A stretch of 64,000 bases of DNA from Octopus sinensis. Its lineage: Eukaryota. Each line of letters opens with the position of its first letter. Position 1 is the first letter of the stretch. This document shows positions 5,621 to 41,129 of the stretch, in pieces. A model generated the notes under the pieces. It was given only the letters and a program-made list of their open reading frames with translations, had not been told where the DNA came from and did no database searches. The stretch spans positions 35,774,001-35,838,000 of the forward strand of contig NC_043003.1 in NCBI RefSeq assembly GCF_006345805.1, written 5' to 3'. The translations under genes were made by a program, and so were the position numbers.

Positions 5621-6420
5621 AGGGCAACAATTTGAGAAGGACACAGATGATGAGGGACCAGCTGACGAAGTTAAGACATTTTAATTAGTTCGTGGAGGTG
5701 TTTTATGATCAATGTATGAATAGAATTGAACTGATTGCATCCCTAATTTTCGGGTAGTTTGTTCTTTTTTTATTTTCTTTAACTTCAGTTTTCAGAATCT
5801 CAATAATCACTTGGTCGGCTAGATTCATAGAAATCTGCGAGGGAAAAATAAATTACCAAACCATCGTTCCCATCCCCGGACACTTAAAGCTTCATTTCCA
5901 TTGACAATGAACATTTCTTGCCGTTTCCATTGCTGAACATCTCACTTTGAATTCAAACAATGTAGCAGGGTCTGATACGAGACGGATGTACAATAATGTC
6001 TAAAAGGGTGAAATCGATATGACTGTGGGATAAAGTGGTCTACAAATTAAGATCGAACATTAGAATATACAAATTAATGTTTTTTTTTACTGAAATTACA
6101 GAAAAACTACACTGAAAGTGATCATGGCGAAAATACATTTGGAAGTTCTTTCCACAGAAGTGGGAGACAGAGGGAAGAAGCCATACACCTACATGCATGT
6201 ATATACATACATACATAAACACTGAAGTCTACCAATCTATATATCTAACTCTCTTTCTGTTTGCATACACACACACACACACACACGACCTCGAACACAC
6301 AAGTGCAAACAAGGGAGTCAGAGAAAGGCAGAATGCCACTTATATCTGAACACTACTATAGAAATATTCCTTTTAAAAAAACTTTTCTTCTAATTTTTCT
6401 AAATTTAATTATTTAATCGT

Positions 6421-6522: not shown

Positions 6523-6600
<78 letters not shown>

Positions 6601-6650
6601 ATGCATATATGCATATATGTATGTATGCATGTATGTATGTATAAATGCAT
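6515..6650. repeat. (TA)n/(TG)n/(TATG)n microsatellite
   Basis: Directly visible. Confidence 0.97.
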
Positions 6651-18970: not shown

Positions 18971-19055
18971 TATGCTCACTTTCGTAATACATGATTTCAA
19001 TCGGCTACATACTCTATATGAACATACTTACATACCTATATATGTGTGTATATGT

Positions 19056-19093
<38 letters not shown>

Positions 19094-24900: not shown

Positions 24901-26049
24901 AATTAAGATGCTGCTAGAGTTATAGAACAATTAGTCTAATTAGTCCCCTCCCCCAGGAGAGTATTTCTAAGAGTCCTGTAAATCAGCATTAAGGGAGAGG
25001 CATGAGAAATTCTTGCAGAAGAAAAGGCAGGTTTTAACCCCAAAACGAGTATCTGAAGTACGTATTTAACATTAGCCTGCTTAACGATACAATATATTAC
25101 ATAGAATATATGATATCTGCACACACGCAGATGTATGTATATGTGTTTGCATGTGTTTATATGTGAGTGGAGGGTTGAACAGAAGTTAGACGAAAGCACA
25201 GCAAACGGGAAACTAGAAGAAAACTTAACAAATGGGAAATTAGACAAAGACACGATACACGGAATATTCGCAGCTAAGTTTTCCTCATGAGTCAATGATG
25301 CAAAATATCATGGCAGTTTCACGACAGTTACCATCGATACTGCTCATTTTTGCTGGCGCCAGAGTTTTTATTAAGCTACTGAGGAAAGCTAGCGAATGTA
25401 TACTAAGACAGAAACAAACAAGACATTGCATAACTATAACAGCACGAAGCCTTGCGGATACATGCAACGGAAGAAGAAATTAATAGTTATACATATACCA
25501 CCACAAATACAACAGAAAGAGCTTTGCAGCTATCGGACGAACTTAGTGGAGTTGCGCAAAGAGTAAATGGAGAAAGTCTTGGAGGACAAAGCGGGACGCT
25601 TATATGTGTGTGTATATATATATATAAATTATTGAAATGGATAAATGAATTAACTTGTTACGGATTATTCAAATGATAACGATACCTTTTTTTCAGCTGC
25701 TATATCATTAATAGCTGCTATATCTCTCTCCCTTGCAGCCTTCTAAACACACTGCCACACATACATAGGCGCACACACACATACATGTAGGCATTTTCTC
25801 ACACCCAAACACTATAGCACTCATTCTTAAAACAATTCGAATATTAACACCAGTCATACAGAATACATTCACACTCTTTGATTTTCCTGTAACCCTCCCC
25901 CCTGTTGGCCGGATTTTGACCTTGAAGTATCTCAACAGACTTTTTCGTCGGCTTTCACCCAGCCTGGCGTCAACGCATATTGAGAGACCGTTTTGTGCCA
26001 TTTATCCCATGGGCTCCTCGCGAGCGTTTGTCGAAAAGCTTGCTGTGCA

Positions 26050-26167
26050 TTTTGTTGGAGAATTAAGTCCCTGGATTTTCCTGAAGAGAAGGCTGCAAAA
26101 TGGTCTCCTTATTCAATCCGAATTAGGGACTTTGCAGCCTTTGAAACATATGTAGAAAATAACAAAA
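26050..26167 (+). ncRNA. Extended type I hammerhead ribozyme, apparently intact
   Basis: Stem I attttc (26075-80)/gaaaat (26155-60); core CUGAAGA 26081-87; stem II gaaggctgcaaa (26088-99)/tttgcagccttt (26131-42); GAAA 26143-46; palindromic stem III acatatgt; GUA triplet 26152-54; stem Ib ttttgtt (26050-56)/aacaaaa (26161-67); loop II complementary to the stem I bulge. Confidence 0.8.
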
Positions 26168-26502
26168 AGGAATTTTGTTAAATCTTCGTTCAGCTCCATT
26201 TCTTCCTACACTAAATATATATATATATATATGTATGTATGTACGAAAACTTTTCAATCTACGGAGAAATAGCTCATTTAGCCTTGTTTATATATCTTCT
26301 ACATTGGTTACATATATTATATCATGCATTGATAAATAAACGGTTAATATCTTCGCTATGCAAATTAGTAGACCCTGTTCTCTATACCTTCTGGAACTAA
26401 TGAGTATGTAAATAGATTTGCTGCTTTTTTCTATAGGATTGGTCAAAATAATATTCGCACTTCTGATGAGAAGCTAGCATCTGGTATTTAATAAATAGTT
26501 AC

Positions 26503-26555
<53 letters not shown>

Positions 26556-26562
26556 TATATAT

Positions 26563-26773
26563 ACTCTTACTCTCTTTTACTTGTTTCAGTCATTTGACTG
26601 CGGCCATGCTGGAGCGCCGCCTTTATTCGAGCACATCAACCCCATGACTTATTTTTTGTAAGCCTAGTACTTATTCTATTGGCTCTTTTGCTGAACCGCT
26701 AAGTTACGGAGACGTAAACACATCAGGATCGATTGTCAAACGACGTTAGGAGGACACATACACACCACACACA

Positions 26774-26804
<31 letters not shown>

Positions 26805-26995
26805 CACGCATATATATATATATATATAAACATACGACGGGCTTCTTTCAGTTTCCGTCTACCAAATCAACTCACAAGGCTTTGGTTGGCCCGAGGTTAT
26901 AGTAGAAGGCACTTGCCCAAGGTGTTCAGTGAGACTGAACCCGGAACCATGTAGTTCGTAAGCAAGCTACTTACCACACCGCCACTCCTATGCCT
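26563..26995 (-). mobile_element. tRNA-derived SINE, family B (CORE-like domain, internal microsatellite, LINE-related tail)
   Basis: Minus strand: aggcataggagtggcggtgtggtaag head, ggttccgggttcagtc B-box-like, caccttgggcaagtgccttct CORE-like, tail ggcgctccagcatggccgcagtcaaatgactgaaacaagtaaaagag. Confidence 0.85.
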
Positions 26996-27144
26996 GTATA
27001 TATATGTGTATGTATGTACGTTATGTATGTATATATATATATATGCATGTATGTATGTATGTATGTATGTATGTATGTATGTATGTGTGTGTGTGTGCAT
27101 TGTGTATGTGTATATGCGCCAGATTGTGAGTTGTGTGACATGTG

Positions 27145-40988: not shown

Positions 40989-41067
40989 ATATAGATATAT
41001 ATATATATATGCGTGTGTCTGTGTGTGTATGTATATATGTATACATATATATGCGTATCTATGTATT

Positions 41068-41129
<62 letters not shown>

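What the first reader, a model, noticed from the sequence alone, without database searches (positions are those of the whole stretch)
26050..26179. Apparently intact extended type I hammerhead ribozyme with a loop II/stem I kissing pseudoknot
Seen: all catalytic positions are canonical (C3-A9 = CUGAAGA 26081-87; G12-A15.1 = GAAA 26143-46; C15.2-G16.2; U16.1 and A17 at 26153-54; predicted cut after 26154). The only deviation is a G10.1-U11.1 wobble. Stem Ia is 6 perfect bp. After an 18-nt 5' bulge (26057-74), stem Ib adds 7 bp (26050-56/26161-67). Stem II is 12 bp with a 31-nt loop. Loop II uuagggac (26123-30) is complementary to bulge gucccugg (26067-74; 6 WC + 2 GU), and ggaga (26057-61) can also pair with ucucc (26104-08). 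A 3' hairpin (26161-67/26173-79) competes with stem Ib and could act as a switch. Stem III is the palindrome acauaugu. Known: loop II-stem I contacts are what make natural hammerheads fast at low Mg2+; short palindromic stem III is typical of metazoan type I motifs; vertebrate introns carry conserved domesticated hammerheads (HH9/HH10). Inference: this motif is far more elaborate than the other hammerheads here, is not decayed, and is not repeated in the window, so it may be a domesticated cis-acting ribozyme or the marker of an undescribed retrozyme-like family.
Basis: partly seen in the sequence, partly recalled or inferred. Interest (0 to 1): 0.9.

Follow-up and report, generated by a model that had tools for sequence, protein, structure and literature searches.

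The report
Hammerhead motif of a Penelope-like retrotransposon
The hammerhead ribozyme motif is real, but it is the standard 3'-end hammerhead of a very abundant Penelope-like retrotransposon, and this locus holds one dead, truncated copy rather than a domesticated ribozyme.

Summary
My descriptor finds it as the only hit in the window. None of 300 simulated windows gave stem I >=6 with stem II >=8.

It is not single-copy. The exact 29-mer across the cleavage site occurs 304 times in the genome, and the DNA search raised 1903 candidates at 93-97% identity.

Window 25687-26221 is the last ~535 nt of a ~3.4-kb retroelement. Its RT folds like telomerase RT, and it has a C-terminal GIY-YIG-like domain. 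It shows the Penelope-like element (PLE) insertion hallmarks: 5' truncation, head-to-head inverted pairs, partial tandems, a "tail" at one end only, and (TA)n targets. PLEs are known to carry minimal type I hammerheads there (PMC4209133).

The hammerhead belongs to the family consensus. The window copy has two private T>C changes in it, which is the neutral expectation.

The "31-nt loop II" folds on itself. The kissing helix is no better than 16-47% of shuffles.

Helix III is a perfect palindrome, and the predicted homodimer is a double hammerhead.

No Rfam hammerhead model matches. G10.1-U11.1 replaces G-C.

Domestication is rejected. Cleavage is untested.

The parts
25601..25686 (-). (TG/TA)n microsatellite (25601-25626) followed by a 60-nt fragment (25627-25686). 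The fragment is the element's ~165-nt 'tail' module in inverted orientation, read here as an inverted 5'-truncated partner copy at the 5' side of the insertion.
   Evidence: BLAST of the window against 29 other copies and the flank listing. In 11 loci the same module follows the element's 3' end (ACTAAATATATA|AAACTTCAAATTTCC...) in the opposite orientation with an identical junction. In 6 loci, including the window, it lies upstream with variable truncation. It is seen at one end only, as reported for the PLE 'tail' (PMC8557442, PMC11167929).
25687..26221 (+). 5'-truncated copy of the retroelement: the last ~535 nt of its 731-nt 3' UTR.
   Evidence: Homology to full copies (L038 7692-8226; L044) starts sharply at 25687. 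The copy differs from the consensus by 3.6%, and 9 of the substitutions are private.
26065..26071 (+). AAGTCCC (family consensus AAGTTCC). This short box upstream of the hammerhead also occurs upstream of the hammerhead-like motif of PLE family X. 26069 C is private to this copy.
   Evidence: The 29-mer with Y at this position has 334 genome matches, and the first 100 listed all carry T.
26075..26080 (+). Hammerhead stem I, 5' strand (AUUUUC).
   Evidence: It pairs with 26155-60.
26081..26087 (+). Catalytic core C3-A9 (CUGAAGA).
   Evidence: The sequence is the family consensus.
26088..26142 (+). Helix II: a 55-nt imperfect hairpin with a 12-bp basal stem (G88-U142 wobble at 10.1-11.1), then 4+3+4 bp and an AAUCC loop.
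   Evidence: The hairpin folds at -27.0 kcal/mol, against -14.8 when the 31 nt are forced open.
26143..26146 (+). Core G12-A15.1 (GAAA).
26146..26153 (+). Helix III palindrome ACAUAUGU: 2-3 bp in a monomer, 8 bp between two copies.
   Evidence: The homodimer MFE of -66.6 (against 2 x -28.9) forms the double hammerhead.
26154..26155 (+). Predicted cleavage site, between A17 (26154) and G1.1 (26155).
   Evidence: Position follows from hammerhead numbering. No cleavage data exist. 5' ends of truncated copies do not pile up here.
26155..26160 (+). Stem I, 3' strand (GAAAAU).
26172..26187 (+). ATTTTGTTAAATCTTC box downstream of the hammerhead, shared with PLE family X (ATTTTGTTGAATTTTC).
   Evidence: The local alignment of the post-hammerhead tails was matched by 2/1000 shuffles.
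26216..26245 (.). (TA)n(TGTA)n microsatellite at the 3' end of the insertion, which is also the preferred target.
   Evidence: Nearly all copies end in (TA)n.

Best explanation
Window 25687-26221 is a dead-on-arrival, 5'-truncated copy of a young and very abundant Penelope-like retrotransposon (PLE). The full element is about 3.4 kb. [quoted passage not shown]

The hammerhead at 26075-26160 is the element's own sense-strand type I hammerhead. It sits about 60 nt before the 3' end, where PLEs characteristically carry minimal hammerheads.

Shown here:
- The motif, its presence in the family consensus, and the copy number.
- The PLE-type protein and the PLE insertion architecture.
- Stronger conservation of the last ~170 nt than of the rest of the 3' UTR.
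- Hammerhead-like motifs at the same place in two other PLE families of this genome, with different stem I sequences.

Inferred:
- The RNA is not a good monomeric ribozyme. Helix III is only 2-3 bp, and the 5' strand of stem I is sequestered in a fold about 10 kcal/mol more stable.
- Two copies in one transcript (pLTR-ORF-pLTR partial tandems) or on two transcripts would pair through the palindrome ACAUAUGU into a double hammerhead and cut after A17.
- That would release a unit-length RNA with 5'-OH and 2',3'-cyclic phosphate ends, as proposed for PLEs and animal retrozymes.

At this locus there is no partner hammerhead and no sign of selection, so the copy most likely does nothing.
For: Motif and chance.

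Copy number:
- 1903 first-look candidates, with 44 matches at 93-97% identity.
- 304 exact 29-mers across the cleavage site, against 0 for the reversed control.
- 334 and 269 matches for two other 29- and 31-mers.

Element extent and 5' truncation:
-.
- 655 first-look candidates for the 5' part against 1903 for the 3' end.

Insertion architecture:
- Head-to-head inverted pairs: L013, L014, L024, L044, and many -/+ pairs 50-480 nt apart.
- Tandem copies: L011/L012.
- Tail at one end only, and (TA)n ends.

Protein:
- RT motifs KDHK, FDI..FYPS, MGS, YRDD and FLDV.
- AF2 model with pLDDT 82. The best PDB folds are telomerase RTs (6zdq, E 4.5e-10), ahead of DRT, retron, group II and LINE-1 RTs.
- C-terminal domain has invariant Y, Y-x-G, R, H, E and N.
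- GIY-YIG is the only Pfam family hit recurrently, in 6 of 19 members, best E 5.8e-4.
- Its best PDB fold is T4 endonuclease II, E 0.17, probability 0.80.

Consensus and decay:
- The hammerhead is the family consensus.
- Variation among 29 copies is 1.1% in 26050-26179 against 4.6-5.7% upstream.
- The window copy's private changes are 2 of 9 inside the hammerhead region, with 2.2 expected.

Other families: X and Z, plus retrozyme-like families with the same CUGAAGAG...GAAACAURUGU flavour.

Dimer prediction.

Literature:
- PLE hammerheads have a long helix II, a short palindromic helix III and low activity, and occur as opposite-strand pairs 100-700 bp apart (PMC4209133).
- PLE structure, tail and (TA)n bias (PMC8557442).
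- The tail explained by internal RT initiation (PMC11167929).
- PLEs annotated in Octopus (PMC13282606).
Against: - No Rfam hammerhead model scores the motif, even at E<=10.
- 10.1-11.1 is G-U, not the G-C that is highly conserved in canonical and PLE hammerheads.
- Helix II (12 bp plus extension) is longer than the 6-8 bp reported for PLE hammerheads.
- The monomer's active fold is about 10 kcal/mol above the MFE.
- 5' ends of truncated copies do not pile up at 26155. Only 1 of about 15 ends falls there in a 29-nt interval, and the sample was biased.
- The youngest related family, Z, has C at core position 4 in 13 of 13 copies. So catalysis may not be what is conserved.
- The 3'-terminal 36 nt are about as conserved as the hammerhead. 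Conservation may therefore reflect RT recognition.
- The GIY-YIG assignment rests on sub-threshold matches.
- No RNA or cleavage data exist.
Confidence: 0.85

Rival explanations
1. The hammerhead-shaped module is kept as a structural 3'-UTR element of the retrotransposon. It might serve RT binding, the start of target-primed reverse transcription, or template switching. On this view it is not an active ribozyme, and the canonical core of family A is inherited rather than selected for cleavage.
For: - Family Z is near-identical in 13 copies, and copies of this family carry intact ~717-aa ORFs. It has CCGAAGA (U4>C) in 12 of 13 copies and CCGAUGA in one.
- Family X has only a 2-bp helix II with a GCAA loop.
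- All three PLE families lack G10.1-C11.1.
- The whole last ~170 nt is conserved, not only the hammerhead.
- Flanking boxes are shared by families A and X.
- Junctions of inverted pairs often fall in the helix III palindrome.
- PLE min-hammerheads cleave poorly in vitro (PMC4209133). Hammerhead-dead mutants do not affect insertion in vitro (PMC11167929).
Against: - Family A keeps all 11 invariant core positions in its consensus and in nearly all of 36 sampled copies.
- Stem I covaries between families, and helix III stays palindromic. That is what a dimeric ribozyme needs.
- Canonical, Rfam-scoring hammerheads with the same core flavour exist in the same genome.
Confidence: 0.3
2. The ~550-nt unit is a non-autonomous retrozyme in its own right: a small hammerhead repeat that makes circular RNA and borrows PLE enzymes. 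On this view it is not simply a truncated PLE.
For: - Tandem copies with a 1050-bp period (L011/L012).
- Animal retrozymes are thought to derive from PLE pLTRs (preprint 10.64898/2026.07.22.740005; PMC7229834).
- Retrozyme-like 431-bp tandem hammerhead repeats without RT/EN exist in this genome (L036/L037).
Against: - Copies form a continuous 5'-truncation series into the RT/EN body. Starts are seen at 25687-25909 and up to 3.4 kb upstream.
- 25687 is not a shared unit boundary. Most copies run on upstream of it.
- The window holds a single copy.
Confidence: 0.07
3. One reading: a domesticated, locus-specific cis-acting ribozyme with a loop II/stem I kissing pseudoknot and a 3' hairpin switch.
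For: - The motif is intact.
- The two private substitutions of this copy (26069 and 26163, both T>C) each turn a G-U into a G-C in the proposed kissing helix and in stem Ib.
Against: - Hundreds of near-identical copies exist.
- Private substitutions occur at the neutral rate.
- The kissing duplex is matched by 16% of shuffles for the window copy and 47% for the consensus.
- Its partner bases are self-paired, and opening them costs 12.2 kcal against a gain of 7.8-10.7.
- Helix II places the loop 12 bp or more from the core, while the stem I bulge starts after 6 bp.
- Family X keeps the AAGUUCC box but has no such loop.
Confidence: 0.02
4. A chance match to the hammerhead consensus, with no biological meaning.
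For: - No Rfam match.
- Relaxed descriptors hit random sequence at about 0.09 per 64 kb. That implies thousands of chance hits per genome.
Against: - None of 300 simulated windows reached stem I >=6 with stem II >=8.
- The motif sits on the sense strand, at the position where PLEs carry hammerheads.
- Related families carry the motif at the same position with covarying stem I.
Confidence: 0.02

Closest known systems
Minimal type I hammerheads of Penelope-like elements (Cervera & De la Pena 2014, PMC4209133; Arkhipova lab, PMC8557442, PMC11167929)
   Same: - Sense-strand type I hammerhead in the 3'/pLTR region of an RT plus GIY-YIG element.
- Helix II longer than canonical.
- Short palindromic helix III that implies action as a dimer.
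- No recognisable loop-loop contacts.
- Thousands of dispersed, mostly truncated copies.
- Frequent opposite-strand pairs 100-700 bp apart.
   Different: - Helix II is far longer: a 12-bp stem within a 55-nt hairpin, against 6-8 bp.
- 10.1-11.1 is G-U instead of the conserved G-C.
- Stem I is a full 6 bp.
- The 'tail' is ~165 nt rather than 30-40 bp.
- The host is a cephalopod. No hammerhead report for cephalopods was found in the searchable library.
Animal non-LTR retrozymes and satellite hammerheads (newt satellite 2, Schistosoma Sm-alpha, mussel, axolotl; PMC7229834)
   Same: - Type I topology with a CUGANGA...GAAA core.
- Weak palindromic helix III and activity as dimers.
- AT-rich repeats.
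- The same genome holds such repeats with the same core flavour (L031, L035-L037).
   Different: Retrozymes are 170-400-nt tandem units without an ORF. They have a 4-6-bp helix II, G10.1-C11.1 and often loop1-loop2 contacts, and they score with Rfam RF00163. The window motif sits in the 3' UTR of a coding 3.4-kb element and does not score.
Conserved intronic hammerheads of amniotes (HH9, HH10)
   Same: Type I hammerhead in a metazoan genome.
   Different: HH9 and HH10 are single-copy, orthologously conserved and match Rfam RF02275/RF02277. This motif has hundreds of copies, matches neither model, and shows neutral decay at this locus.

Membership tests
Hammerhead ribozyme, type I | Invariant core: C3 U4 G5 A6 N7 G8 A9, G12 A13 A14, A15.1-U16.1, H17 | tested here: met
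   CUGAAGA at 26081-87, GAAA at 26143-46, U at 26153 and A at 26154. The same sequence is the consensus of 36 copies.
Hammerhead ribozyme, type I | Three helices around the core, with helix I open-ended (type I) | tested here: met
   Stem I is 6 bp and stem II is 12 bp. Stem III is 2-3 bp in the monomer and 8 bp in the predicted homodimer.
Hammerhead ribozyme, type I | G10.1-C11.1 base pair at the base of helix II | tested here: not met
   G26088-U26142 is a wobble in the window copy and in the family consensus. PLE families X and Z also lack G-C in register.
Hammerhead ribozyme, type I | Match to a curated covariance model (Rfam RF00163, RF00008, RF02275, RF02276, RF02277) | tested here: not met
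   No hit at gathering score in the window and none at E<=10 on 25950-26250. RF00163 does find 7 other hammerheads in this genome. A plausible cause is the 55-nt helix II in a 45-position model; this was not tested.
Hammerhead ribozyme, type I | Loop I/loop II tertiary contact that gives fast cleavage at low Mg2+ | tested here: inconclusive
   The complementarity exists, but 16% of shuffles (window copy) and 47% (consensus) do as well. It also competes with 12.2 kcal of self-pairing in helix II. It is not conserved in family X.
Hammerhead ribozyme, type I | Site-specific self-cleavage after H17 | not testable with these tools
   No RNA or biochemical data are available. 5' ends of truncated genomic copies show no pile-up at 26155 (small, biased sample).
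Penelope-like element (EN+) | Reverse transcriptase of the telomerase-related type | tested here: met
   RT motifs are present in the ORF and in 28 homologues. The AF2 model (pLDDT 82) has telomerase RTs as its best PDB matches (E 4.5e-10 to 4e-8), ahead of other RT classes. Pfam RVT_1 itself did not match.
Penelope-like element (EN+) | GIY-YIG endonuclease fused to the RT (C-terminal) | tested here: inconclusive
   - Pfam PF01541 gives E 0.011-0.0006, below the cut-off. It is the only family hit recurrently, in 6 of 19 homologues.
- TIGR01453 gives E 0.0023.
- Invariant Y...Y-x-G...R...H...E...N and a Cys cluster upstream.
- The best PDB fold for the domain is T4 endonuclease II, a GIY-YIG enzyme by my own knowledge, at E 0.17 and probability 0.80.
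- A profile search of PDB sequences found nothing.
Penelope-like element (EN+) | Insertion architecture: strong 5' truncation, partial tandems (pLTR), adjacent inverted 5'-truncated copy, 'tail' at one end only | tested here: met
   The tail here is ~165 nt, longer than the 30-40 bp reported.
Penelope-like element (EN+) | Hammerhead motif in the pLTR/3' region on the sense strand | tested here: met
   The hammerhead lies at L038 8086-8159, about 590 nt after the ORF stop (7495) and about 65 nt before the element end (8226), on the ORF strand.
Domesticated intronic hammerhead (HH9/HH10 type) | Single-copy locus under purifying selection, conserved at orthologous positions | tested here: not met
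   There are >=304 exact copies. This copy shows a neutral share of private substitutions. Orthologous loci in other species could not be examined with these tools.

The most novel reading that the evidence does not exclude
In this octopod-type PLE clade, the hammerhead-shaped 3'-UTR module may be selected mainly as a structural element for retrotransposition. It might act as an RT docking or initiation site, or its palindromic helix III might be a template-switch point that generates the head-to-head inverted copies. Catalysis would then be dispensable. This is suggested by a very young family with U4>C in every sampled copy, by the loss of G10.1-C11.1 in all three families, and by conserved boxes flanking the motif.
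Probability: 0.25. Interest if true: 0.55.

Novelty: new member of a known kind. Interest (0 to 1): 0.25.

Why it matters
The practical lesson is for annotation. A canonical-core hammerhead with a long helix II escapes all Rfam hammerhead models, and read in isolation it can look like a unique, elaborate ribozyme. Copy number and flanks show it is transposon cargo.

It adds a cephalopod PLE family to the hammerhead-bearing PLEs. It also offers a natural series in one genome: family A with a canonical core, family X with a 2-bp helix II, and family Z with U4>C. That series could be used to ask whether PLE hammerheads need to cleave at all, which is an open question in the PLE field (PMC8557442, PMC11167929).

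It has no bearing on host gene regulation at this locus.

Tried and rejected
- Rfam scans at gathering score and at E-value thresholds found no hammerhead. The 296 weak hits are miRNA models landing on TA/TG microsatellites.

- I looked for hammerheads in the 3' UTRs of distant protein homologues: Argonauta hians L063 and two metagenome contigs, L064 and L065. No strict motif was found. Only a decayed look-alike appears in L063 at about 5990-6080. No cross-species covariation could therefore be obtained.

- I tested whether truncated copies start at the cleavage site. Of about 15 ends inside 26135-26163, one is at 26155. The sample was chosen to fall in that interval, so this says little.

- I tested whether the 'tail' is a tRNA-derived SINE. 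ARAGORN finds nothing.

- A profile of the EN domain against PDB sequences gave no GIY-YIG hit. A whole-protein profile gave only E~0.9 to group II intron-type RTs. Pfam RVT_1 gave no hit.

I used targeted fetches instead.

- The kissing pseudoknot, the ggaga/ucucc pairing and the 3' hairpin switch were considered and rejected as unsupported. The subfamily change C>A at about 26105 breaks the ggaga/ucucc pairing and one pair of the helix II extension without compensation.
Full report
**1. The observation**

- CTGAAGA at 26081-87 and GAAA at 26143-46.
- The palindrome ACATATGT at 26146-53, with A17 at 26154.
- Stem Ia 26075-80/26155-60, six Watson-Crick pairs.
- Stem II 26088-99/26131-42, twelve pairs starting with G88-U142.
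- Stem Ib 26050-56/26161-67, and a competing 3' hairpin 26161-67/26173-79.
- The 8-nt complementarity 26067-74/26123-30.

I wrote a relaxed type I descriptor: stem I >=4, CUGANGA, an optional bulge, stem II >=4, GAAA, helix III, UH. It finds this motif and nothing else on either strand of the window. In 300 first-order Markov simulations of the window it hit 0.087 times per window. None of those hits had stem I >=6 together with stem II >=8. The motif is therefore more than chance.

No Rfam hammerhead family matches, however. There is no hit at gathering score over the whole window and none at E<=10 on 25950-26250.

**2. It is a repeat**

A DNA search of the window's own genome (2.72 Gb) with 25900-26260 raised 1903 first-look candidates. 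The 44 scored matches are 93-97% identical.
- The exact 29-mer spanning the cleavage site occurs 304 times, against 0 for the reversed control.
- A 29-mer over stem I and the core occurs 334 times.
- A 31-mer just downstream occurs 269 times.

Aligning 36 copies shows that the hammerhead is the family consensus. The window copy differs from it at two positions, 26069 and 26163, both T>C and both absent from the other 28 sampled copies at that column.

**3. What the repeat is**

Extent. Homology to other copies begins sharply at 25687 and ends at 26221-26243 in a (TA)n tract. In most other copies it runs on upstream. Longer fetches define an element of about 3.4 kb (L044 660 onward; L038 5579-8226).

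Truncation. Copies start at many different points: 25687, 25788, 25801, 25846, 25858 and so on. The 5' part raises 655 first-look candidates against 1903 for the 3' end. This is the gradient expected of target-primed reverse transcription.

ORF. It starts at the first bases of the unit (Met at L044:663). It carries RT motifs (KDHK, FDIANFYPS, PMGS, YRDD, FLDV) and then a C-terminal domain with the pattern VVY...YIGxT...R..NH...E...N.

Homologues. A protein search found 136 homologues of about 700 aa. One is a hypothetical protein of the octopod Argonauta hians, 40% identical.

RT fold. Pfam does not recognise the RT. An AlphaFold model of a homologue (pLDDT 82) has telomerase reverse transcriptases as its best PDB matches (6zdq E 4.5e-10; also 6usq and 3du5). 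These rank ahead of DRT, retron, group II intron and LINE-1 RTs.

Endonuclease. The evidence is sub-threshold but convergent:
- GIY-YIG is the only Pfam family matched recurrently, in 6 of 19 homologues, best E 5.8e-4.
- TIGR01453, group I intron endonuclease, scores E 0.0023.
- The isolated domain (pLDDT 86) has T4 endonuclease II as its best fold match, E 0.17 and probability 0.80.

Insertion architecture. It is the one described for Penelope-like elements (PMC8557442):
- Head-to-head pairs of 5'-truncated copies: L013, L014, L024, the inverted copy upstream of the full-length L044, and many -/+ pairs 50-480 nt apart.
- Partial tandems (L011/L012).
- (TA)n at the ends.
- A ~165-nt 'tail' present at one end only. 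It either follows the 3' end with an identical junction in 11 loci, or lies inverted upstream of the copy.

In the window, 60 nt of this tail (25627-25686) lie inverted just upstream of the copy.

Location of the hammerhead. It lies on the ORF strand, about 590 nt after the stop codon and about 65 nt before the element's end. This is where PLE hammerheads are found (PMC4209133; Fig. 1 legend of PMC8557442). Octopus genomes are already annotated as holding active Penelope families (PMC13282606). An endonuclease-domain query raised 21,641 first-look candidates here, many within intact ORFs of about 720 aa.

**4.

Loop II. The minimum-free-energy fold extends stem II into a 55-nt imperfect hairpin: 11+4+3+4 bp with an AAUCC loop, at -27.0 kcal/mol. 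Forcing the 31 nt open gives -14.8.

Kissing helix. It is worth -10.7 kcal/mol in the window copy and -7.8 in the consensus. A duplex at least as good arises in 311 of 2000 shuffles for the window copy and 943 of 2000 for the consensus. A loop that starts 12 or more base pairs from the core also cannot easily meet a bulge that starts 6 bp from it (inference).

Bulge box. PLE family X keeps the 'bulge' box AAGUUCC upstream of its motif but has no such loop.

Private changes. The two T>C changes do strengthen the proposed helices. They are 2 of the copy's 9 private substitutions in 534 nt, where length alone predicts 2.2 for the hammerhead region. I read this as neutral decay.

**5. How it most likely works**

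As a monomer the active fold is poor. Enforcing stems I, II and III gives -32.6 kcal/mol, against an MFE of -42.6 for 26040-26185. In that MFE the 5' strand of stem I pairs with 26057-64. Helix III has 2-3 pairs.

Two copies are predicted to form the classical double hammerhead. The homodimer MFE is -66.6, against 2 x -28.9. It has an 8-bp intermolecular helix III (ACAUAUGU with itself) and both stems I formed in trans.

This matches the literature on metazoan type I and PLE hammerheads, which act as dimers in tandem transcripts (PMC4209133, PMC7229834). The inferred role is processing of pLTR-ORF-pLTR transcripts into unit-length RNA. Same-strand copies 2.5-4.3 kb apart do exist.

The window holds a single truncated copy and no partner. 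At this locus the motif is most likely inert.

**6. Evidence for constraint, and its limits**

Among 29 copies, mismatches to the consensus are 1.1% in 26050-26179 and 1.5% in 26180-26215, against 4.6-5.7% upstream. The counts are not independent, because subfamily differences are shared among copies. Five copies from subfamilies 84-96% identical are 97-100% identical over the hammerhead. The last ~170 nt are therefore constrained among master copies, but that includes the 3' end and not only the ribozyme.

Two other PLE families of this genome carry a hammerhead-shaped motif at the same place:
- Family X: CUGU|CUGAUGA|A-CG-GCAA-CG-A|GAAA|CUCAGAG|U-A|ACAG.
- Family Z: GAUAA|CCGAAGA|GAUG..22 nt..CAUC-U|GAAA|CUCAGAG|U-U|UUAUC.

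Stem I differs in sequence yet pairs in all of them, and helix III stays near-palindromic. Retrozyme-like repeats that do score with RF00163 share the flavour CUGAAGAG...GAAACAUGUGU. These are L031 and L034-L037, with a 431-bp tandem in L036/L037 and no RT/EN within 1.5 kb.

Against catalysis, family Z has C at core position 4 in all 13 near-identical copies. None of the three PLE families has G10.1-C11.1. Truncated copies do not preferentially start at 26155 (biased sample). Published PLE hammerheads cleave weakly and are dispensable for insertion in vitro (PMC4209133, PMC11167929). Whether this RNA cleaves is open. I put it at roughly even odds.

**7. Comparison and verdict**

The feature works like, and is best filed with, the minimal type I hammerheads of Penelope-like elements. 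It differs from them in four ways:
- A much longer helix II.
- A G-U at 10.1-11.1.
- A longer tail.
- A cephalopod-type host, for which I found no hammerhead report in the searchable library.

It fails two hammerhead membership tests, the Rfam models and G10.1-C11.1. I therefore call it a hammerhead motif of PLE type rather than a proven ribozyme.

It is not a domesticated element and not a new class. Novelty: a new member of a known kind. Interest: low to moderate.

Noticed in passing
window, e.g. 40997-41069, 2527-2604, 19025-19093, 6569-6641: The permissive Rfam scan gave 296 sub-threshold matches. Nearly all of those shown are miRNA models (mir-297, mir-3149, mir-1277, mir-466) landing on (TA)n/(TG)n microsatellites. 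These are composition artefacts, not miRNA genes.
   Followed up: no
L069-L081 (own genome, e.g. C5:61734200-61735500): PLE family Z has 13 near-identical 3' ends with a hammerhead-shaped motif. Its core reads CCGAAGA (U4>C) in 12 copies and CCGAUGA in one. An extra U lies between helix II and GAAA.
   Followed up: partly
L066, L067, L082-L089 (own genome, e.g. C2:110634100-110634140): PLE family X has a minimal hammerhead-like motif with only a 2-bp helix II closed by GCAA and flanked by an A-A mismatch. It lies 37 nt before the (TA)n end. It shares an AAGTTCC box and an ATTTTGTTrAATyTTC box with the window family.
   Followed up: partly
L031, L034, L035, L036/L037 (own genome): Canonical type I hammerheads scoring 34-48 bits with RF00163 (GUAC CUGAAGA GACCC..GGGUC GAAA CAUGUG U). 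One occurs as a 431-bp tandem repeat. No RT/EN lies within 1.5 kb, so they look like retrozyme-like non-autonomous repeats.
   Followed up: partly
L090-L097, L100 (own genome): In close head-to-head inverted pairs of the window family, one partner often ends at 26147-26150. That is inside the helix III palindrome ACATATGT. Another junction sits in the palindrome TCCCTAATTAGGGA at about 26121. Palindromes may be template-switch points during insertion.
   Followed up: partly
window 25601-25686; L009, L013, L014, L017, L018, L022-L024, L026, L027: The element's 'tail' is about 165 nt, against the 30-40 bp reported for PLEs. It is present at one end only and shows no tRNA-like gene by ARAGORN.
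   Followed up: partly
window 26503-27061: A second, unrelated abundant repeat lies about 280 nt downstream of the PLE copy. Copies 70-84% identical occur next to PLE copies in many other loci, probably because both insert in (TA)n tracts.
   Followed up: no
L047 651-2090: One copy has an internal deletion that fuses the RT reading frame directly to the hammerhead region. The ORF ends ...HFVGELSSWIFLKRKLQNGLLIQSELGTLQPSKHM, which is the hammerhead read as protein.
   Followed up: no
own genome: An endonuclease-domain query from the Argonauta homologue raised 21,641 first-look candidates. Many lie within uninterrupted frames of 650-727 aa. This PLE clade is very abundant and probably still active in this genome.
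   Followed up: no
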